Shown in pieces: positions 5,131-45,327 of a stretch of 47,454 nucleotides of DNA; within the stretch, counting starts at the first letter, position 1, and the number at the start of each line of letters is the position of its first letter. The DNA lies in contig NIVC01003281.1 of the NCBI GenBank assembly GCA_002269645.1, forward strand, positions 1 to 47,454, written 5' to 3'. The translations under genes and the position numbers were made by a program. This stretch comes from Macrostomum lignano (taxonomy: Eukaryota). The notes under the pieces were generated by a model. It searched no databases. It had not been told where the DNA came from and worked only from the letters and a program-made list of their open reading frames with translations.

Positions 5131-5531
5131 TGGGAATATTTTGTATTTAGCGGGAATGTCTGTTATCTTTGTGAAAATTATATTTTGTTGTCTTCTGTTA
5201 ATTTTAGAAAAAAGAGATTCATAGCAAATATCATAGTCCGTGTCAAATTTACACTGAATGTGATTTTTAAAAGTGAAGAAGGAATTGGTCTTTAAGAAAA
5301 TTTGCTTTTTTAATTGTTTTCCATGAACTATTTTTGCTTCTTGCTTATTGGGCGCCCCGAAGGGGGGCCGCACTAGATTGCTTGTATAGAGCTATATTTC
5401 CTATGTCTGCGAAATTGGATTCAGACAGCAAATTTCGGTTATCCGCTAGTAATGATTGGATACCGTAAACCAATCCGATGTAAAACATTCAAGGAATTAG
5501 CACTTTCAAGCGCTGCTTTGATCATCTTGAA

Positions 5532-32963: not shown

Positions 32964-33303
32964 ATGTTTTGTTGCCTATGCTGTTCCTATTTTGTCCTTA
33001 TTTACCCCCTATCTTGGGCCGCCCCCGTGGCCGACCCACGGGGCCCACCCCCCTACCCCGATTTTTTTCTCGAAAGAGTTAAAGTTTTGTTACAATTAAA
33101 TTTACAGTTTACAATTACAATTACAGTTAATTTTTTTGTAATTTCGATAGGTTATCTGCTAATTATTCGAAATCAATCAAATCGGTCACTTTCGCTTCAA
33201 CGCACGCCTTGTTGGCATAGTTTTTTTATAACAGTAGCAATGATAGCAATGTGCGTATTCGTGCCATTCGTGCTCGCGCTCGGCCGGTTGTAGCGCCTGC
33301 TGC

Positions 33304-36128
33304 TTTCTTTTCTTTTCTTCACTCCGACCTCCGACCGCCCGCAGGCGGCCGGGGCGGGGCCGGGTGGCCGCCAGGGTCGTCAATGGGCGGCTCGGTCCGA
33401 CCCACCCTCTTGAGGTAGTCACAGATGAGGGCGCCGCCACCCTCGAGAACGTCGTTCCAGGAAATGACCACCCCGCCCCAGGTGCGGATGCGGGCCTGGT
33501 GGTGGCAGGGGCAGTAGAGCATAAGATGATCGACCGAGTCCGGTTCTCCGCAGTCGGCGCATCGGTCGTTCTGAGCGAGGCCGAACCGAAACAGGGTGTC
33601 GCGAGTCAGGGGGGATTTCTTAGTGCGGATTTGGCTGACCGTCACCTGGCCCCACCTGGGAAGGTCATCGTGGCCTGGCGTCGGAGTCAGGTGCGGATGC
33701 GTGCGGTCCCGCGCAGTTCTCCAATTGGACAGTACGTGGCGGACGGCATTTTTGGCGGAGGCCTGGGAAAGTTGCGCGGTGTTCGGTTCCAATTCTGCAG
33801 CTTCGCGGGCGAGGGCGTCCGCCGCCTCGTTACCAGCAATGTCCGCGTGGCCAGGAACCCATTGGAAGTGGAGCCTGGTCTGAGCTGGGAGGTCGGTGAT
33901 GAGTCGCCAGATCGTGAGGACGAGCGAATTAGTAGAACGGTACGGGCCTTGGTTGATGGCCTGAAGGCCTGATCGTGAGTCGGTACAGATGTGAACCGAG
34001 AGCCGCGGGTTGCCGATGGTGTCGAGGGTTTGACGTAGGGCTCTTATCGCTGCCTCGATGGCGACCAATTCAGCGTGGGTGCTACTGCACCACTTTCCGG
34101 CTTGCTGGCGGATGGACATGCGGAGTGCCTCGATGGATTCGGCAGTGAGGAGAGCACCTCCGCCGGCAGCAGTGCCGTCCGGGCTAACGGAGCCGTCCGT
34201 CCAGATGGTGCAGTCGGCGCTCGGTAACAGGGCCAAGGTGGCTTCTGCCGCAGCACGGCGGGCCTCCAGTGGGTCGGATCTTTTGGTCGGCCGGGCGAGA
34301 TCGGTAGCGATGGTGATCGCCTGGTCGGCTAAGTGCCACGGCGGGAGAGCCGGGTAGTGCTGGCGGTCTATGTCTCCGATGTGGATACCGGCAAGGCTCA
34401 GGAGCCACAGGCCTACTCGTCTGAAGCATGGCCGGTGACTCAAGACGATGTCTTCATCGTGGAGGTCCGTGTCGACGGGCCGGTCCGCTGGGCCTTCACG
34501 CTCCCAAGCTTCGTGGGCTCTGTAGCGGAGGCGAGGGGCGACTTGAGCTACCATAAGGGTACGGGCCGGGTCGTCGTCCGGTAGGCCGAGCAGGCGAATG
34601 AATTCGTTTGCGGCTAAGGTTTTGGCTCGGATGCTGAGGGCTGGTAGTCCGGCCTCGGCGAGTAGGCAGCGTCGTCTCGTGATGCCCAGACAGCCGGTAA
34701 TAATTCTGGCGCATTTGTTTTGCTCGGCCTCGAGTTTGAGGCGCGCCGTTGGTGCCGCATGATTGAAGTATAGTGCCGCTCCGTAGTCAAAAACCGACCG
34801 TACGTAGGCCATGTAGGCCGCACGTAGGGTGCGACGGTGGGCGCCATAGCTCTTGCCAGCGAGCACTTGGATGCATCGACGTCGGTCGGCCATTTTCTGT
34901 CGGACCATCTCAGTGTGTGGCGAAAAGGTGAGTTGATCATCCAGCTTGAGTCCTAGGAATGTCGGCGTGGGGTCATAGGCGAGGTCGTGGTTTTCAAGTC
35001 GCAGAGCGGGTCGGACTTTGCCGCCGCACTCGGTAGGATCGAGGGTAAAGGTTGAGTAGGCACACTTGGAGTGGCTGAGGCTCACTTTCCATTTACGGGT
35101 CCAGGCAGCCGCTTGGTCAAGGGCGGGTTGCAGTTTGTCGGCGCAGGCAGCGAGGGAGCGTCCTGTGGCAAGTAGCGCGGTATCGTCTGCGAAAAGTGAG
35201 CGGTGTACGTTCTCGGCCATCTCGGCATCAATGTCGTAGGCATATATAAGCCAAAGGAGGGGGGCGATCACGGATCCTTGCGGGAGGCCGTCCGTGAAAA
35301 CTCTCCAGTTCGAGGTCGCACTGCCCCATCTAACACGTGCACGACGGTCTGCAAGGAAGTTTCTCAGGTACCGAATCAGGTGCTTGGGAATACCCAGCCG
35401 GGCCATCTTGGCGTACAGGGCTGGTCGCCACACTTTATCGTATGCCTTAGCGAAGTCCAGGAGGACGAGGATAGCTCTCTCCGGTTTTCTCTGTTCGAAG
35501 GCGTCAAAGATGGCTTGGGTAATGCGGGCGAGCTGGTCCATGGTCGAGTGGCCTCGTCGGAAACCCGCTTGGTTCCGGTTGAGGAGGCCTCTGGTGTCCA
35601 GCCAGTGATAGAGTCTGTTTTGTAAGAGGCGCTCCATGAGTTTGCTGACGCAGCTAAGGAGAGATATAGGTCGGTAGGAGCTAGTGGCGCTCGGGTCTTT
35701 GTCTTTTTTCAGGATGGCGATGATTTCGGCCCGGCGCCAGGCAGTTGGGACTGAGCCAGTGAGCCAGCTACGGTTTAGTAGTTCCAGGAGGGCGTTCCGG
35801 CCTGCATCGCCGAGTTGTTTGAGGAGTTCGTTGCAGACGCCGTCGGTTCCTGGTGATTTGCCAGTCTTGAGTTGACGGATCGCGACGTTGAGTTCGCCGA
35901 TATTGAAAGGGCTGCAGATCTCCGTCCTCAGTCCGTTGCAGGGGCAGTCGTTGGTGTTGCTCGCCTTGTGTGCCTCGATGACGACGGGTCTGTCTTCTGG
36001 TCTAGACTTTGGGAGCCGGGAGACCGTCGCGTAGTCGGCGCAGAATAGTTCGGCTTTCTCTTTATCCGTGATGGCTTTGGCGGGTGGATTCCCGGGATCG
36101 TGGTTCTTGGTGAAGATAGTCGAGGGGG
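33304..36128 (-). mobile_element. Non-LTR retrotransposon E1 (I-group-like: RT, RNase H, CCHC), 5'-truncated
   Basis: Open frame with RT (PGTDG, YRPISL, QAGFR, LDFAKAYD, GLPQGSV, FADD), RNase H (WTDGS, AEL.AI, TDS, QWVPGH..GNE.AD) and CADC...H...C. Tail GAAGAAAAGAAAAGAAA. 12-bp TSD GCAGCAGGCGCT at 36129-36140 and 33292-33303. Confidence 0.9.
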
Positions 36129-36211
36129 AGCGCCTGCTGCTGCTGCTGCTGCTCGCGCTCGGCCGGTTGTAGCGCCTGCTGCTGCTGCTGCTCGCGCTCG
36201 ACCGGTTGTAG

Positions 36212-36216
<5 letters not shown>

Positions 36217-36245
<29 letters not shown>

Positions 36246-39200
36246 CCGCACGTCTCGATGTCAGCTGGGCTGCAAGAGACGGGGGCGCTAGATGCGCCCC
36301 AGCCTGCGAAGAAGGTTGATGGTGAGGCTCGCGTCAACCAGGAGTGCGTCTTGTTCGCCGGGGCGGGCCGCGAACCCTCGTGGGCAGTCGAAAAGAATGT
36401 GCTGCTCGGTATCGCGAGCTCCGCAGTCCGGGCACACGTCGGAGTCGGACAGGCCGAGTCGGAGTCTAGTGGCGGCGGCAAGGTTGCTGCAGCCGGCGCG
36501 GAGCTGGTTGACCAGGACCTCAAATTTCCTCGGCAAGGTTGGGAGTCTTGGCCATGGCGCCTTACGGCCCCAAAGCTCGAGGTCTAGATCACGTCTTTCC
36601 CGGCAGAGGTAAGCGCTGGCTGCCATGATGGGGACACCATGGTCGCTCTGATCTGCGGTCGCCAGTCTTGCCGCCCTATCTGCGCGTTCGTTCATGGGGA
36701 TGCCGCAGTGAGCCGGTATCCAGGTGATGCGGATGGAGTGATCGCTACTCTGGTTCCAAATTTCGGAGACGATTCTGCTGTTGCTGCGCTGGCCCGCCAT
36801 GATGTTGTAAATGGCCGCCTGGGAGTCAGTGAAGATGTCGATACATTGATGCTCTCTGGTATTCTGGATGGCAAGCAGTATGGCTTGAAGTTCCGCCTGG
36901 GTGCTGCTGCAGATGTTCCCTGCAGCGCTGGTGACGACCCGACCCCAGCATGGGGTGATGATCACCGCTGCGCTGGTGCCGTCCGATGTGCCGCCGGCGG
37001 CCGAGCCGTCAGTCCAAACGCTGACCGGGTGGGAGCCGCGCTCCTCGAGGTACCTCAGTGCAGTATCGCTGCGGAGGCTCTGGGGCTGGCTGCGGCTGCA
37101 CTGCGTAGCCAAACTGAGGTCGAAAGTGATCGCTTCGTGGGCCGTCCACGGCGGCTGGAGCTGCGGAGCGGGCTCCCTGGTGGGGCCGTTGAGCAGCCCC
37201 TGTCTGTCGAGCTCTTGGCTAACGCGGCGCCAGCAACCACGGTGTTCTCGCTGGTAGTCGTGGAGGACGGTGACGATGTCCTTTGGGTCTCTCGGTGTTC
37301 TCTGGTGGCTCTCAAAGGCTCGATTCTTCAGTCGTGGTCGGGTGTCCATTTTGGCGACCTGAAGTGCTGGAGTGTCCTGCGGGAGACGTAGGATTCTTTC
37401 TCTGAGCGTCGCACTACGTTGTAGCACCAGATGGCTGAAGGGCGACAGGTTCGCCACCGCAAGCAGGTCCCGGATGTGAGTAAGTTGGAGGCACCCAGTG
37501 ATGATCCGCGCACAGCTGTGCTGTTGGCGGTCGATCAGCAGCTTAGAGCTGGCTGCAGTGAAAGACCCCCAGACCCCGCACGCGTAGTCGGCAACAGAGC
37601 GAACGGTGGCGATGTAAGCCATGCGGAGGATCTGACTGTCCGCACCGGCCGATCTGGTAGCGAGGGCAGTGAGAGGTCTTCTGCGGGCGGCCATCTTTTT
37701 ACGGATCTTTGATGCATGGTGGCTGAAACTTAGGCTGTCGTCAAGAGTGAGTCCCAGGAAGGTCGGTGTTGGATCGAAGGCAAGCTTGTCGCCGTTGATC
37801 TGGAGGTTCACTCTCCGTTTGCCGTTGTTTTCATTTGCCGCTAGAGTGAAGGTGGAGTAGCAGCATTTCCCAGTGCTAATGGAGACTTTCCAATCTCGGC
37901 ACCAGTCGGCCACTGCATCCAGGGCTGGTTGGAGTTCTCTGGCACAGATGTCGAGTGTGCGAGCGGTCGCCAGTAAGGCCGAGTCATCGGCGTAGAGACT
38001 GAGGCTAACCAAAGGGTTCGCCTCGGCGACTGCTTGGGCTAAATCGTTGACATAGATATTCCACAGCGTGGGCGCTAGCACACTGCCCTGTGGCAGACCT
38101 TCGCGGAAGACTCTGTTCCGGCTCGTGGCGTTAACCCAGCGGACTGCGTTGTGACGGTCCGACAGGAAGCCGCGGATCCAGCGGATGATGCGCTTGGGGA
38201 TGCCCATGCGGTGCATTTTGGCATACAGGGCCAGGCGCCATACTCTGTCATACGCTCGGCAGAAGTCGAGGAGGCAGAGGATGCTGCGTAGCGCCGGTAG
38301 ACTCTCGAGGCCGTCAAAAATGGCTTGGCAGACTCGCGCGAGCTGTTCCTCGGTGCTACGACCGCGACGAAAACCAGCTTGAGTGGGCGTGAGGCCGCCA
38401 CGGCTCTCCAGGTCATAATTAAGACGAGCCAGAACCATGCGCTCCGCGCACTTGGCGATGCAGCTGGTAAGTGCGACGGGGCGGTAGTTATCCGGTGATG
38501 CGGCGTCTTTCCCTTTTTTCTGGATCGGTATAATGGTGCCAATTCGCCAGCTGGTCGGTGTTTTGCCCTCCCGCCAGGTGCGGTTGATGAGGCTGAGTAA
38601 GGCTTTGTCAGCGGCCGGCGGGAGGCGTTTAAGCATCTCGTTGGAGACACCGTCGGTTCCCACAGCCTTCCCTGATTTGAGACATCGGATAGCGGCGCGG
38701 AGCTCGTCGATCTCGAAAGGGGCGTCCGGGCCGTCTGTTTGGGGGTCACCCATAGGCGTGGTGGCCTCGTTCGCTTCGTATCTGATGGCCGAGTCATTTT
38801 TCCGTCTGGGGACTCGGCTAACTTCGGCGTAGAGTTGGCAAAAGAGTTCGGCCTTCTCTTTGTTAGTGCGGGCGGTGCGCTCCGGCGAGTCTGGGGAGGC
38901 GGCCCTGACGATGGCAGCCGGGTCCGGAGTTTTAAAACCATCGCCTCTCAGTGCGCGGAGTAAGCCAAAAATGTCCGCGAGTCCTGGCTGAAATTTGCCG
39001 CTTTATCGAACAGGAAGGCTTTTTTCTCCCTCCGGAGACAGCCTGAGGCGTTGTGGCGGGCTCTGTTTGCGGCAATAATATTTTCTGGTGTCGGTTTTTT
39101 TCTGCGGATTGTCTCGCGGAACGTGTAGCTTTGGAGGCCTCTTCGCAGGCGTCGTTCCAGAACGGCAGGCGTCTCGTCTCTTTCCCGGAGCTGCGCGTGA

Positions 39201-40014
39201 TGGCAAGTCTTGCTGCGTTCAGGATGGCTTCGGCAAGGCGTGTGGCCTCTGTGTTTAAGGTGGTGTCGTTGCGTTCGGATTCTGCCCAGGTATTTAGCGA
39301 CTCCCTGAAGGCTCCCCAGTCTGCCTTCTTATAGATCCAGCGTTTTTGCCCGCAGTGACGGGTCTTTCCGGTGTTAGAGGCTGGGAGGCCGAAAGCGATC
39401 GGCAGGTGATCGCTTCCCCAGTCTGGTAGCGTCTTCCAGGAGTCCGTGATGGATCCGGCAATGGTGCTACTACAGATGGTCACGTCTGGGCTACTGAGGC
39501 GGCCAGTACTGGGGCAGGTGCGTGTGTGGCAGGTGGTATTGCAGATGACGAGCCCATTGCGGGCGACCCACTCGTCGACGGTCTGGCCTCTGAGATCTTC
39601 TTCAATGTGGCGGTCCCAGCTTCCGTGTGCGTTGTAGTCGCCTCCGAGGATGACTCTACCGGTAGTCGGGAGATTGGTGAAGCTGGGTTGCCAGGTGTTA
39701 TCGGGACGTTGGCAGCTGGATGGTGGTGCATAGATAGATGCTATCACGATCGGCTGCTGTCCTTTGAGGCGGATGCGGCAGGTGGCAACGTCCAGGAGGT
39801 CGTGTTCTCTATCGACTTTGAGTCTGTCGTACTGGACGTCATCGCGGACGAGCACCATAGTACCTCCCCGTCCTGTAATTTTTTTGTTGGTTTTTGGGAT
39901 AGTGGACTGGGCTGGCGGTGGCGTGCTGGTGATTTCTCGTCCGGATGCACTGGTTTGAACAGATTGGTTGTCTGCGCCATGCCATGGTGTGAAACGGACG
40001 CTGCAGGCGGTACG
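36217..40014 (-). mobile_element. Non-LTR retrotransposon E2 (APE endonuclease, RT, RNase H, CCHC), 5'-truncated, two frameshifts in the EN-RT linker
   Basis: APE motifs IYAPP, GDYNAH, SSPD.T, GSDHLPI (N-terminal QWN/QET motifs missing). RT/RNase H ORF 36288-38753 (YRPVAL, QAGFR, LPQGSV, YADD, WTDGS, WIPAHCG, CPDC...H...C). (AG)n tail at 36217-36243. Apparent 4-bp TSD AGGC. Confidence 0.9.
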
Positions 40015-40904
40015 GCCTGCTGCTGCTGCTGCTCGCGCTCGACCGGTTGTAGCGCCTGCTGCTGCTGCTGCTCGCGCTCGACCGGTTGTAGCGCCTGCTG
40101 CTGCTGCTGCTGCTGCTGCTGCTCGGCTTGGTGCCACGTTGCAGGATGCGGTGACAGTGGTCGGCCATGAATAATCTCTGTGCGGGCCACAGCTAGATAG
40201 GCTTGTGCGTACTCACGTGCCTGCAATTGGTGCTCCCTGCCCTTTATGGGCTTTCCCTTATGCTCATTGAGCTCCGGGTGGTGGCTTCTGTAGTGCGAGC
40301 GGAGCTGCACGCACGCCTCTCTACACACACAGCACATGCCGTGACCAGCAGTAACAAATCGCTCGAAGGTCGCAAACCATAAAATATCCTCGACGCGATG
40401 ATCTGGGTGTTGACTTCTAGCATGGCGTGCCAAGTTGTCTTTACGCATTTCCGCATCGCAGATGACGCAGTTTACATTGATTGATGGCATTATCACGCTG
40501 TTTGTTGAGGGTAAAAGCTTTCGCACAAATTATTTCGCAGTCATTCTACGGCACTCTTCTATTCTATGACACTCAAAAAACGTAGGAAGGGCCATAAACA
40601 TTTTAGTAGCGCCTGTAGCGCCTGTCAATGCAGCGGAATTCCTATCAGCTCTATTTAAAACCACACACATAACAGCGGTCTCTTATAGCTGAGTAGCAAA
40701 TTTCTGTCTATGGCCGTTACTTAAGTGCCGGACTAGAAGCGAATAAAGCTAAGTAGCCCTAAGTAGCATTATAACCCATAGTTAATGCAAACCCTTAGTT
40801 CATTCATTCTTTCGTTCGTGACTCCAGGTCACTACAGGCTTGGCAGTAGAAAAAGAGGCGCTGCTTACAATTATTTTTTTATTTTACTTTCTTAGAAACA
40901 AGAA

Positions 40905-41070
40905 ATCTATGTTTGCTCGCTGCTCGCGCTCGGCCGGTTGTAGCGCCTGCTGCTGCTGCTGCTGCTGCTGCTGCTCGGGCTCGGCCGCTTGTAGCGCCTG
41001 CTGCTGCTGCTGCTCGCGCTCTGCTGCTTGTAGCGCCTGCTGCTGCTGCTGCTGCTGCTCGCGCTATTTG
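40905..41070 (-). repeat. Uninterrupted array of the (CAG)n-GCGCTACAA(C/G)CGGCCGAGCGCGAG minisatellite
   Basis: Three variant units of the motif found at the LINE junctions. Confidence 0.9.
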
Positions 41071-42944: not shown

Positions 42945-42973
42945 CCCTAACCCTAACCCTAACCCTAACCCTA
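42945..42973. repeat. Interstitial telomeric-type repeat (CCCTAA)~5
   Basis: CCCTAACCCTAACCCTAACCCTAACCCTA. Confidence 0.9.
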
Positions 42974-42979
42974 GACGTC

Positions 42980-43970
42980 GTCCCCAAGGGCCAGGACGTG
43001 GTCCCCGAGGGCGGGGACGTGGTCCCGATTCAGGGGACGTAGTTCCCGAGGACGGGGACGTGGTCGCCGAGAGCGTGGTCCCTGAAGGGGGGACGTGATC
43101 TATTAAGGCGGGGACGTGATCTATTAAGGCGGGGACGTGGTCCCGATTGAGGGGACGTGGTACCCGAAGGCAGGGGACGTGGTACCCGAAGGCAGGGGAC
43201 GTGGTCCCCGAAGGCAAGGGACGTGGTCCCCGAAGGCAGGGGACGTGGTGCCCGAAGGCAGGGGACGTGGTCCCCGAAGGCAGGGGACGTGATCCCAGAA
43301 GGTGGGGACATGGTCACAGAAGGCGGGGACGTGGTCCCGATTCAGGGGACGTGGTCCCGAAGGCAGGGGACGTGGTCCCCGAAGGCAGGGGACGTGGTCC
43401 CGAAGGCAGGGGACGTGGTCCCCGAAGGCAGGGGACGTGGTCCCCGAAGGCAGGGGACGTGGTCCCCGAAGGCAGGGGACGTGGTCCCCGAAGGCAGGGG
43501 ACGTGGTCCCGAAGGCAGGGGACGTGGTCCCCGAAGGCAGGGGACGTGGTCCCCGAAGGCAGGGGACGTGGTCCCCGAAGGCAGGGGACGTGGTCCCCGA
43601 AGGCAGGGGACGTGGTCCCCGAAGGCAGGGGACGTGGTCCCCGAAGGCAGGGGACGTGGTCCCCGAAGGCAGGGGACGTGGTCCCCGAAGGCAGGGGACG
43701 TGGTCCCCGAAGGCAGGGGACGTGGTCCCAGAAGGTGGGGACGTGGTCACAGAAGCCGGGGACGTGGTCCCGATTCAGGGGACGTAGTTTCCGAGGACGG
43801 GGACGTGGTCACCGAGGGCGTGGTCCCTGAAGGCGGGGACGTGATCTATTAAGGCGGGGACGTGGTCCCGATTCAGGGGACGTGGTCCCCAAGAGCGGTG
43901 ACGTGATCCCAGAAGGTGGGGACGTGGTCACAGAAGTCGGGGACAAGGCTGGGAAGTGGTCTCCGAAGGC
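42980..43970. repeat. GC-rich 22-bp satellite (GAAGGCAGGGGACGTGGTCCCC)n with higher-order structure
   Basis: Dozens of units. A variant block at ~43020-43145 recurs at ~43770-43875. Confidence 0.95.
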
Positions 43971-44241: not shown

Positions 44242-45327
44242 GGGAGTACGACGTTTGCTTGCGGAAAGTTTGCTTGCCGAACTTTGCTTGCAGGAATTTT
44301 GCTTGCCGAACTTTGCTTGCCGAGCTTTGCTTGCGGAATTTTGCTTGCCGAACTTTGCTTGCCGAACTTTGCTTGCGGAATTTTGCCTGCCGAACTTTGC
44401 TTGCCGAACTTTGCTTGCGGAATTTTGCTTGCTGAAGTTTGCTTGCCGAACTTTGCTTGCCGAACTTTGCTTGCAGGAAATTTGCTTGCAGGAACTTTGC
44501 TTGCCGAACTTTGCTTGCGAAATTTTGATGTCTGCTTTCTAGAAATTTGCAATCACACAATCGCAAGGTTTTAACTTGCACAATTATTTTCTTGTTTGCT
44601 TGCTTGTTTTGATTGCTTGTAAAGTTGGTCAGTCAATTATTACTTACTACAGATGCTTTGCAAGTGGATTCTTATCAGGTTCGACGTAAACTGACTTGAC
44701 ACGAAGCTTTCAAACTAGGCTTATAGAGTTTCATTCTAAGAATGTAGTATATAGAATGCTTAGAGATTTAGTATAGGTAGATAGGGATCGGTAACAGTAT
44801 AAATCTTTGTAGTTCCTGAGTTCAGCACGATTGAGCAGGTATGATAATTGCAGTGATGCTAATGTATAATAATGCATATACTAATAATATTTTAGTATAT
44901 AAAATGCAGTTAATAATCCGCCATATCCTCATACAAAATCATAACACTATAGGCGACTTCCACGAATCTTAGAAAATGAAAATTAGAAATACAAGAGCTC
45001 AAAAATAGGTTTCTTTAAGGTCCCGCAAAACTTTGGCTGGCAAACCTCGCAAGAAAATTTCCTGCAAGCAAAGTTCGGCAAGCAAATTTCCTGCAAGCAA
45101 ACTTCGGCAAGCTTATGTGCAGCAAGCAAATTTCCTGCAAGCAAAATTCGGCAAGCGAAGTTCGGCAAGCAAAGTTCGGCAAGCAAAGCTCGGCAAGCAA
45201 ACTTCGGCAGGCAAAATTCCGCAAGCAAAGTTCGGCAAGCAGACTTCGGCAAGCAAATTTCCGCAAGCAAAAGTCCCGCAAGCAAACTTCGGCAAGCAAA
45301 CTTCTCGCAAGCAAATTTCATAGACCC
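44242..45327. mobile_element. Foldback-type non-autonomous DNA transposon, 1086 bp
   Basis: Inverted arms built from 14-15-bp repeats (TTGCTTGCCGAACT left, AGTTCGGCAAGCAA right). Imperfect termini GGG...TTTGCTTGCG. Perfect 8-bp TSD GTCTGAAG at 44234-44241 and 45328-45335. Confidence 0.85.

What the first reader, a model, noticed from the sequence alone, without database searches (positions are those of the whole stretch)
33186..40490. Two different LINE families inserted at the same position of a coding CAG minisatellite: candidate new site-specific retrotransposon/target system
Seen: E1 (33304-36128) is flanked by a 12-bp TSD GCAGCAGGCGCT. E2 (36217-40014) is flanked by AGGC. Both junctions fall at the (CAG)n/GCGCTACAACCG boundary, in neighbouring repeat units and the same orientation. 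Deleting both elements and one copy of each TSD gives 476+84+106=666 nt, an uninterrupted 221-aa ORF (ZnF, polyQ repeats, HEWHEYAH...RALKRK*). The two RTs are clearly divergent paralogs, so these are independent insertions. Established: APE-type site-specific LINEs target rDNA, telomeric, tRNA, snRNA and simple microsatellite repeats. Inference: I do not recall a case targeting a ~39-42-bp protein-coding polyQ minisatellite, shared by two RNase H-bearing families.
Basis: partly seen in the sequence, partly recalled or inferred. Interest (0 to 1): 0.85.

Follow-up and report, generated by a model that had tools for sequence, protein, structure and literature searches.

The report
Two LINE insertions in one CAG minisatellite
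Two unrelated, broken copies of ordinary jumping genes (LINE retrotransposons) landed 78 bp apart in the CAG-rich repeat of a small orphan zinc-finger gene; the way they landed matches how their non-specific relatives insert, so this is probably a local hot spot or a coincidence, not a new site-specific system.

Summary
On the minus strand, E1 (33304-36128) and E2 (36217-40014) are two 5'-truncated LINE copies. Removing each with one target-site duplication (TSD) copy restores a 666-nt, 221-aa ORF.

E1 and E2 share only 43% amino-acid identity and never group as sisters (0/100 bootstraps). E1 sits with barnacle and TARA elements. E2 sits with acoel and marine-metagenome elements.

The site-specific reading is not supported, but it is not refuted.
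- Ten relatives from both lineages have the same purine-repeat tails and ten unrelated flanks.
- All four group-A relatives with a detectable TSD have a 13-bp TSD starting AG or GAG, as E1 does (AGCAGCAGGCGCT).
- Under this "nick 5' of AG" rule, the array has 41 AG sites on the CAG strand and 5 on the other. Shared orientation and near-identical phase are therefore expected (joint probability about 0.26).
- A second array about 800 bp away is unoccupied.

Only the co-location in one 213-bp array remains unexplained (about 0.8% per insertion). The array is palindromic and structure-prone, so a hot spot is plausible.

No other E1/E2 copy or empty site could be reached, because the source genome is absent from every collection searched. 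Interest is modest.

The parts
40015..40490 (-). 5' part of the interrupted 221-aa ORF: two C2H2-like zinc-finger motifs, then polyQ and two ALQPVERE/(Q)5 repeat units. The upstream copy of the E2 TSD (AGGC) is at 40015-40018.
   Evidence: No Pfam family apart from a low-complexity TFIIA hit. No homologue in the word-index search. Only four weak hits (E about 1e-4) to generic fingers of the NCxxCxxxMRKxxLxRH type in a full HMMER scan.
36217..40014 (-). E2: a 3.8-kb LINE copy, 5'-truncated inside the endonuclease (APE) domain. APE remnant about 39394-39876. At least two frame breaks at about 38975-39085. RT 37821-38525 (YADD). RNase H 36660-37025. CCHC 36384-36434. (AG)14 tail 36217-36244.
   Evidence: Pfam. 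tblastn against full-length relatives starts at P0007 residue 152, and two frames are needed. Motifs. Tail.
36129..36216 (-). Array segment between the two elements (about two repeat units). Downstream copy of the E2 TSD at 36213-36216. Upstream copy of the E1 TSD (GCAGCAGGCGCT) at 36129-36140.
33304..36128 (-). E1: a 2.8-kb LINE copy, 5'-truncated upstream of RT with no endonuclease. The reading frame is intact (935 codons). RT 34951-35712 (FADD). RNase H 33796-34215. CCHC 33505-33561. GAAGAAAAGAAAAGAAA tail 33304-33320.
   Evidence: Pfam, motifs and absence of stops, junctions.
33186..33303 (-). 3' part of the ORF: downstream copy of the E1 TSD (33292-33303), the last ALQPAERE unit, then HEWHEYAHCYHCYCYKKTMPTRRALKRK and the stop codon.
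40914..41061 (-). Second, unoccupied copy of the same minisatellite (about 3.7 units, three (CAG)n/GCGCTACAA boundaries), about 420 bp upstream of the ORF start. It has no zinc-finger region. It is preceded by a pyrimidine tract plus AG, and followed by a stop codon and AATAAA.

Best explanation
E1 and E2 are ordinary, dispersed APE-type LINEs of an RNase H-bearing clade found in marine invertebrates. The clade's hallmark is a 3' end of the form GCAG(AAG)n or (AG)n.

Each inserted independently by target-primed reverse transcription. The element's endonuclease nicks the bottom strand just 5' of an AG (top-strand view). The freed ...CT-3' end pairs with the purine-repeat RNA tail and primes cDNA synthesis. 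In E1's lineage, the second nick falls 13 bp downstream. Both copies were 5'-truncated on arrival and destroyed the small zinc-finger/polyQ ORF.

Nearly all AG sites of the array lie in the (CAG)n runs of one strand. Any insertion of this clade into the array will therefore tend to have this orientation and sit near the (CAG)n/GCGCT boundary.

That both landed in the same 213-bp array is either chance or a local hot spot. A palindromic, hairpin-prone CAG/CTG array could stall replication or expose nicks. It does not require recognition of the minisatellite sequence.

Shown: independent insertions, TSDs, lineage placement, the generic target rule in relatives, and the AG-site arithmetic. Inferred: the hot-spot cause.
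For: Junctions, TSDs and ORF restoration.

Domains and truncations.

Identity and lineage:
- E1 versus E2: 43% amino-acid identity.
- E1's best database match is 54% (P0009); E2's is 42% (P0001).
- Neighbour-joining tree on 454 columns: E1 with group A 100/100, E2 with group B 100/100, E1 and E2 as sisters 0/100.

Relatives: ten relatives from both groups carry the same tails and ten unrelated flanks (L002-L011).

TSDs of relatives:
- Group A: AGAGTACAGCTGC, AGGCTCTGGTGGA, GAGGGACCGCGGC, AGGGAACAAACAA. All are 13 bp and start AG or GAG. E1's is AGCAGCAGGCGCT, also 13 bp.
- Group B: 19 bp and 12 bp.

AG sites in the array:
- 41 on the CAG strand and 5 on the other.
- P(both insertions in sense orientation) = 0.79.
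- P(both at C^AG) = 0.43.
- P(phase difference of 6 nt or less) = 0.61.

Other points:
- The second array is unoccupied.
- The CTG strand of the array folds at -27 kcal/mol, z = -4.07, with 0 of 200 shuffles as stable.
- One relative (L007) is itself nested in another LINE, so LINE-next-to-LINE clustering occurs elsewhere in this clade.
Against: - The only two copies of this clade in 47 kb both lie in one 213-bp array. That array holds only about 0.8% of the window's AG sites. This is improbable for a single window under uniform insertion.
- The relatives are only 42-54% identical, so their behaviour does not prove that E1 and E2 are non-specific.
- The hot-spot mechanism is inferred only from predicted folding.
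- E2's 2-4 bp TSD does not match the two longer TSDs seen in its lineage.
Confidence: 0.6

Rival explanations
1. True site specificity. E1 and E2 are two LINE families that each recognise the (CAG)n/GCGCTACAACCGG junction of a multicopy minisatellite. This would resemble R1 and R2 sharing 28S rDNA, or TRAS and SART sharing telomeric repeats, with the specificity acquired convergently in two lineages.
For: - Both copies of the clade in the window lie in the array, in the same orientation and within about 12 bp of the same unit boundary.
- The minisatellite occurs at two or more places in the window, so it may be multicopy.
- The best solved-structure matches of the E2 endonuclease remnant are the site-specific TRAS1 and R1Bm endonucleases, though weakly (E = 0.004 and 0.026).
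Against: - E1 and E2 are not sister lineages.
- Each is nested among relatives with unrelated insertion sites.
- E1 shows the generic 13-bp, AG-initiated TSD of its non-specific relatives.
- Orientation and phase follow from AG content alone.
- The nick positions differ by 6 nt.
- The neighbouring array is empty.
- The array was not found in any other collection.
Confidence: 0.2
2. Microsatellite-type preference. These families, or the whole clade, insert preferentially into (CAG)n/(CTG)n runs wherever they occur, as Waldo, Mino, Kibi, Koshi and Dong do for other simple repeats. The minisatellite would be hit only because it contains CAG runs.
For: - Both first-strand nicks are at C^AG inside the CAG run.
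- Microsatellite-targeting APE-type LINEs are an established class (PMC3812793).
Against: - None of the ten relatives is flanked by CAG or CTG runs.
- The element tails are (AG)n and (GAAAA)n, not (CAG)n.
- The 9-unit CAG run of the second array is unoccupied.
- CAG gives no better tail microhomology than any other AG site.
Confidence: 0.12
3. Artefact or mis-parsing. Either the repeat belongs to the elements (UTR or transduced sequence), or the arrangement is an assembly chimera created by the repeats.
For: Repeats flank both elements, and minisatellites can mislead assemblers.
Against: - Both elements end in the clade's terminal purine tail directly before the repeat.
- Both begin at internal positions of the coding sequence.
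- Removing each element with one TSD copy restores an exact repeat unit and the reading frame.
- Relatives carry no such repeat.
Confidence: 0.03

Closest known systems
Uncharacterised RNase H-bearing LINEs of the barnacle Amphibalanus amphitrite and of TARA/ENA marine metagenome contigs (group A: P0003-P0015, P0132). Acoel (Convolutriloba macropyga) and marine-metagenome elements (group B: P0001, P0002, P0017, P0018).
   Same: - Domain order APE-RT-RNase H-CCHC.
- 3' ends of the form GCAG(AAG)n or (AG)n.
- TSDs that start with AG or GAG; 13 bp in group A.
- Frequent 5' truncation.
- E1 groups with A and E2 with B, each at 100/100 bootstrap.
   Different: - Only 42-54% amino-acid identity, so E1 and E2 are new families.
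- The relatives lie in ten unrelated sites, none in a CAG array.
Site-specific R1-clade LINEs (R1, RT, TRAS, SART, R6/R7) and microsatellite-targeting LINEs (Waldo ACAY, Mino AC, Kibi TC, Koshi TTC, Dong TAA)
   Same: - APE-type LINEs.
- Different families can share one repeated target (from established knowledge).
- A tandem repeat is the landing site.
- The E2 endonuclease remnant's best solved-structure matches are TRAS1 and R1Bm EN (weak).
- The list of microsatellite targets comes from PMC3812793.
   Different: - There is no evidence that most copies share the target.
- The nearest relatives are dispersed.
- The tails do not match the target repeat.
- A CAG or coding minisatellite is not among the targets listed.
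- Membership of the R1 clade was not established.
Human L1 target choice (TTTT/A nick, with poly(A) pairing to the nicked T-rich strand)
   Same: Weak sequence preference, set by a short nick motif plus microhomology between the RNA tail and the primer strand. Here the motif is ^AG with purine-repeat tails. The L1 comparison is from established knowledge.
   Different: A different clade, a different tail and nick motif, and the presence of RNase H.

Membership tests
APE-type non-LTR retrotransposon (LINE), RNase H-bearing I/R1/Loa-like group | Reverse transcriptase domain with a Y/FADD motif | tested here: met
   RVT_1 E = 5e-35 (E1) and 4e-33 (E2). FADD in E1 and YADD in E2.
APE-type non-LTR retrotransposon (LINE), RNase H-bearing I/R1/Loa-like group | N-terminal apurinic/apyrimidinic-type endonuclease domain | tested here: met
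   E2: Exo_endo_phos_2 E = 8e-15, but the N-terminal part is missing. E1 lacks the domain through 5' truncation. Full-length relatives have it.
APE-type non-LTR retrotransposon (LINE), RNase H-bearing I/R1/Loa-like group | RNase H domain downstream of RT, and a C-terminal CCHC motif | tested here: met
   RNase_H E = 1.5e-15 and 1e-16. CCHC present in both.
APE-type non-LTR retrotransposon (LINE), RNase H-bearing I/R1/Loa-like group | Insertion by target-primed reverse transcription: TSD, simple-repeat or A-rich 3' tail, variable 5' truncation | tested here: met
APE-type non-LTR retrotransposon (LINE), RNase H-bearing I/R1/Loa-like group | Placement in a named Repbase clade (I, Loa, R1, Nimb, Tad1, Ingi) by RT phylogeny with reference sequences | not testable with these tools
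   No Repbase reference set was available. The only hint is the weak TRAS1/R1Bm endonuclease matches.
Site-specific LINE (R1/TRAS/SART type) | The great majority of genomic copies sit at the same position of the same target sequence | not testable with these tools
   The source genome is absent from the protein, metagenome, GTDB and IMG/VR collections. Only two copies are visible, both in the array.
Site-specific LINE (R1/TRAS/SART type) | The specificity is shared by the lineage, so close relatives use the same or a related target | tested here: not met
   Ten relatives from both lineages have ten unrelated flanks. E1 and E2 are not sisters.
Site-specific LINE (R1/TRAS/SART type) | The target is a conserved multicopy sequence | tested here: inconclusive
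   Two arrays in the window. No Rfam or tRNA gene. The array and the ORF have no counterpart elsewhere.
Microsatellite-targeting LINE (Waldo/Mino/Kibi/Koshi/Dong type) | Copies embedded in one simple repeat, typically with the element's 3' end merging into that repeat (this second point is from recollection) | tested here: not met
   The tails are (AG)14 and GAAGAAAAGAAAAGAAA, while the flank is (CAG)n/GCGCT. No relative is flanked by CAG runs.

The most novel reading that the evidence does not exclude
Two non-sister LINE lineages in one genome have each evolved recognition of the same 39-bp, hairpin-forming, protein-coding CAG minisatellite. It would serve as a shared landing pad, a new target class for APE-type site-specific retrotransposons. 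The zinc-finger/polyQ gene family would be the multicopy host.
Probability: 0.15. Interest if true: 0.75.

Novelty: new member of a known kind. Interest (0 to 1): 0.3.

Why it matters
If the site-specific reading were true, it would add a coding minisatellite to the known LINE targets (rDNA, telomeres, small RNA genes, simple repeats). It would also give a case of convergent target choice.

As the evidence stands, the value is more modest:
- It documents two new families of a poorly described marine-invertebrate LINE clade.
- It defines that clade's insertion signature: purine-repeat tail, nick 5' of AG, and a 13-bp TSD in one lineage.
- It shows how that signature alone produces look-alike "same site, same orientation" insertions in a CAG-rich array.
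- It is a candidate example of a structure-prone repeat acting as a retrotransposition hot spot.

Tried and rejected
Searches for other copies or an empty site (none found):
- Protein searches with E2 and E1 gave best hits of 42% and 54% identity only.
- The zinc-finger N-terminus had no word-index hit and only four weak generic finger hits in a full HMMER scan.
- Exact-pattern scans for the repeat unit found nothing in JGI metagenomes or GTDB genomes. One 19-mer in IMG/VR was a chance match without repeat structure.
- The search for related loci with E1 returned nothing from metagenomes or viral contigs.

Ideas tested and rejected:
- A fusion-protein or co-translation idea. Neither element's ORF is in the host ORF's frame (frame arithmetic).
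- The idea that the repeat is part of the element.
- The idea that the target is a hidden RNA gene. There are no Rfam or tRNA hits.
- Flank homology between the two arrays. Only the repeat itself is shared.

Not achieved:
- No clear nick-site consensus beyond ^AG emerged from the relatives.
- Clade naming against Repbase was not possible.
Full report
**What is there.** All features read on the minus strand. A small intronless ORF starts at 40490. It encodes two C2H2-like zinc-finger motifs, then a polyQ stretch and a 13-residue repeat (QQQQQ-ALQP[V/A]ERE). The repeat is encoded by a 39-bp minisatellite, GCGCTACAACCGGYCGAGCGCGAG(CAG)5-6.

The ORF is interrupted twice.
- E2 (36217-40014) is joined upstream at ...CAGCAGCAGGC|CGTACCGCC. 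It ends in (AG)14 followed by GCGCTACAACC.
- E1 (33304-36128) is joined upstream at ...CAGCAGGCGCT|CCCCCTCGAC. It ends in GAAGAAAAGAAAAGAAA followed by GCAGCAGGCGCTACAACC.

Deleting each element with one TSD copy joins 476+84+106 = 666 nt. The result is an open 221-aa frame with five perfect repeat units. The TSD is AGGC for E2, of which the AG may be tail.

Three corrections apply.
- The insertions are in the 3rd and 5th units, not in adjacent ones.
- The 5' junctions differ by 3 nt in phase, and the first-strand nick sites differ by 6 nt.
- Neither element is complete.

**What the elements are.**
- Pfam finds RT and RNase H in both elements, a weak zf-RVT hit in E1, and an endonuclease (APE) domain only in E2.
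- Both keep F/YADD, the RNase H TDGS motif and a C-terminal CCHC.
- E1 has an intact 935-codon frame but starts about 20 residues upstream of the conserved TDKEKAELF motif. It therefore lacks the endonuclease and everything 5' of it.
- E2 aligns to full-length relatives only from about residue 150 (P0007). It lacks the first endonuclease motifs and needs at least two frame changes around 38,975-39,085.
- Both are thus dead, 5'-truncated copies.
- They share 43% amino-acid identity, and no other fragment of either is present in the 47-kb window.
- The E2 endonuclease remnant's best solved-structure matches are TRAS1 EN (E = 0.004) and R1Bm EN (E = 0.026). This is a weak hint of the I/R1 supergroup.

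**Relatives.**
- The best database match is 42% identical for E2 and 54% for E1. The source genome is therefore not in the protein collection.
- A neighbour-joining tree on 454 conserved columns with 100 bootstraps puts E1 in group A at 100/100. Group A holds the barnacle Amphibalanus amphitrite, TARA Oceans and other ENA contigs.
- The same tree puts E2 in group B at 100/100. Group B holds the acoel Convolutriloba macropyga, a beach-sand metagenome and other ENA contigs.
- E1 and E2 are never sisters (0/100).

I fetched ten relatives with their flanks (L002-L011). All end in GCAG(AAG)n- or (AG)n-type tails, the same kind as E1 and E2. The ten sequences after the tails are unrelated to each other and to the minisatellite. 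They are TACAGCTGCACG, TAACGTTCTTTG, GCTCTGGTGGAA, TAAAATGAGGTC, CCTGGACGGCGC, GGACCGCGGCCG, CTAAAAGCGACA, TGGCCGTCTGGC, GTAGGCAATAGG and GGGAACAAACAA. Both lineages therefore contain dispersed, non-site-specific members.

**The clade's insertion signature.** Where both junctions are on the contig, exact TSDs can be read.
- Group A: AGAGTACAGCTGC, AGGCTCTGGTGGA, GAGGGACCGCGGC and AGGGAACAAACAA (barnacle). All four are 13 bp and start with AG or GAG.
- Group B: AAGAATAACGTTCTTTGAA (19 bp) and GTAGGCAATAGG (12 bp).
- E1's TSD, AGCAGCAGGCGCT, is 13 bp and starts with AG. That is exactly the group-A signature.

The simplest mechanism is generic. The endonuclease nicks the bottom strand 5' of an AG (top-strand view). 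The ...CT-3' end pairs with the purine-repeat tail of the RNA. In group A the second nick follows 13 bp downstream. The microhomology step is inferred by analogy with L1's TTTT/A-poly(A) priming, which is established knowledge.

**How much coincidence remains.** The reconstructed 213-bp array has 41 AG dinucleotides on the CAG strand and 5 on the other. Thirty of the 41 are C^AG sites inside CAG runs. If two insertions obeying an ^AG rule fall in the array:
- both are in the observed orientation with probability 0.79;
- both are at C^AG with probability 0.43;
- given that, they are within 6 nt of the same phase with probability 0.61.

"Same orientation, same boundary" is therefore what the generic rule predicts, with a joint probability of about 0.26. 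It is not evidence for sequence recognition.

What remains is co-location. The array's AG-site density is only 1.7 times the window average, so it holds about 0.8% of the window's sites. Yet it received both copies of this clade. For a single window that is unlikely. Across a genome scan, some such pairs are expected.

A local hot spot is plausible.
- The unit is palindromic (GCGCT...AGCGC, CCGG) and flanked by hairpin-prone CAG/CTG runs.
- Two units of the CTG strand fold at -27 kcal/mol (z = -4.07; 0 of 200 shuffles as stable). The CAG strand folds at -21.6 kcal/mol (z = -2.2).
- Non-B DNA and stalled forks are known to attract LINE integration in other systems (established knowledge). This was not tested here.
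- One relative (L007) is itself nested in another LINE.

**Evidence bearing on the target.**
- A second array of about 3.7 units lies at 40914-41061 with three intact (CAG)n/GCGCTACAA boundaries, and it is unoccupied.
- Only the repeat itself is shared between the two loci.
- The window has no Rfam or tRNA gene.
- The zinc-finger part of the ORF has no real homologue. There is nothing in the word-index search. The full HMMER scan of 1.84 billion representatives gave four hits at E about 1e-4, to proteins with repeated fingers of the NCxxCxxxMRKxxLxRH type.
- The repeat unit is absent from JGI metagenomes and GTDB genomes. A single 19-mer match in IMG/VR is a chance hit.
- No empty-site allele or second genomic context could therefore be examined.

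**Comparison with known systems.** Known microsatellite-targeting APE-type LINEs are Waldo (ACAY), Mino (AC), Kibi (TC), Koshi (TTC) and Dong (TAA) (PMC3812793). Known site-specific R1-clade elements target rDNA and telomeric repeats (established knowledge). A CAG-containing coding minisatellite is not among the targets listed.

The defining feature of these systems is that most copies sit at the same site. That could not be tested here. The one testable correlate, relatives sharing the target, is not met.

E1 and E2 are best filed as two new families of an uncharacterised RNase H-bearing LINE clade. Assignment to a Repbase clade was not possible with the tools at hand.

**Verdict.**
- Observation: confirmed.
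- Independent insertions by two divergent families: confirmed.
- Dedicated site-specific system: not supported, and made less likely by the phylogeny and the generic TSD signature. It is not refuted, because other E1/E2 copies were unreachable.

My estimates are:
- about 0.6 for generic insertion plus hot spot or chance;
- about 0.2 for true site specificity;
- about 0.12 for a general (CAG)n preference;
- about 0.03 for artefact.

A flank census of E1/E2 copies in the source assembly would settle it.

Noticed in passing
window 42945-43944: (CCCTAA)4.8, which is TTAGGG on the minus strand, lies directly next to about 44 copies of a 22-bp GC-rich satellite (CGTGGTCCCCGAAGGCAGGGGA; 67% GC). This could be an interstitial or subtelomeric telomere-repeat remnant. 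TTAGGG rather than TTAGG argues against an arthropod host, even though E1's nearest relatives are from a barnacle.
   Followed up: no
window 40914-41061 and flanks: The second copy of the minisatellite is preceded by a pyrimidine tract plus AG (tttctgctttgcaaatag|CGCGAGCAG). In the polyQ frame it runs to a stop (…EREQRANIDFLFLRK*) followed by AATAAA. It may be the terminal exon of a paralogous polyQ gene.
   Followed up: partly
window 33186-40126 (array units): The 39-bp unit is internally palindromic (GCGCT…AGCGC, CCGG). With the CAG/CTG runs it folds into long hairpins. The CTG strand has z = -4.07 against shuffles.
   Followed up: partly
window 44254-44518 and 45064-45319: Two arrays of the same 14-bp unit lie in opposite orientation about 550 bp apart (TTTGCTTGCCGAAC x18.6 and its reverse complement x17.9). 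Together they form a large inverted-repeat structure of unknown nature.
   Followed up: no
window 18627-20537 (-) and 27872-28789 (+): A 636-aa ATG ORF has a sub-threshold DUF4218 (transposase-associated) hit. A 305-aa ORF has a sub-threshold double-jelly-roll-like domain hit. The window looks rich in transposable elements and repeats.
   Followed up: partly
window 32603-32965: A long (AATC)n/(AATCAGTC)n microsatellite (about 45 units of 8 bp) lies about 220 bp downstream of the ORF's stop codon. Several other minisatellites are present: 84 bp x3.7 at 24707, 96 bp x3 at 31296, and 72 bp x2.8 at 5531.
   Followed up: no
L002 56-95 and L007 32-71; L007 5390-6900: Two full-length group-A relatives (about 5.3 kb) share a 5' start containing CCCTTCACGTGGGG, which defines the clade's true 5' end. 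In L007 the element is inserted into another RNase H-bearing LINE. That LINE ends in an (AAC)n tail next to a roughly 100-bp tandem repeat.
   Followed up: partly
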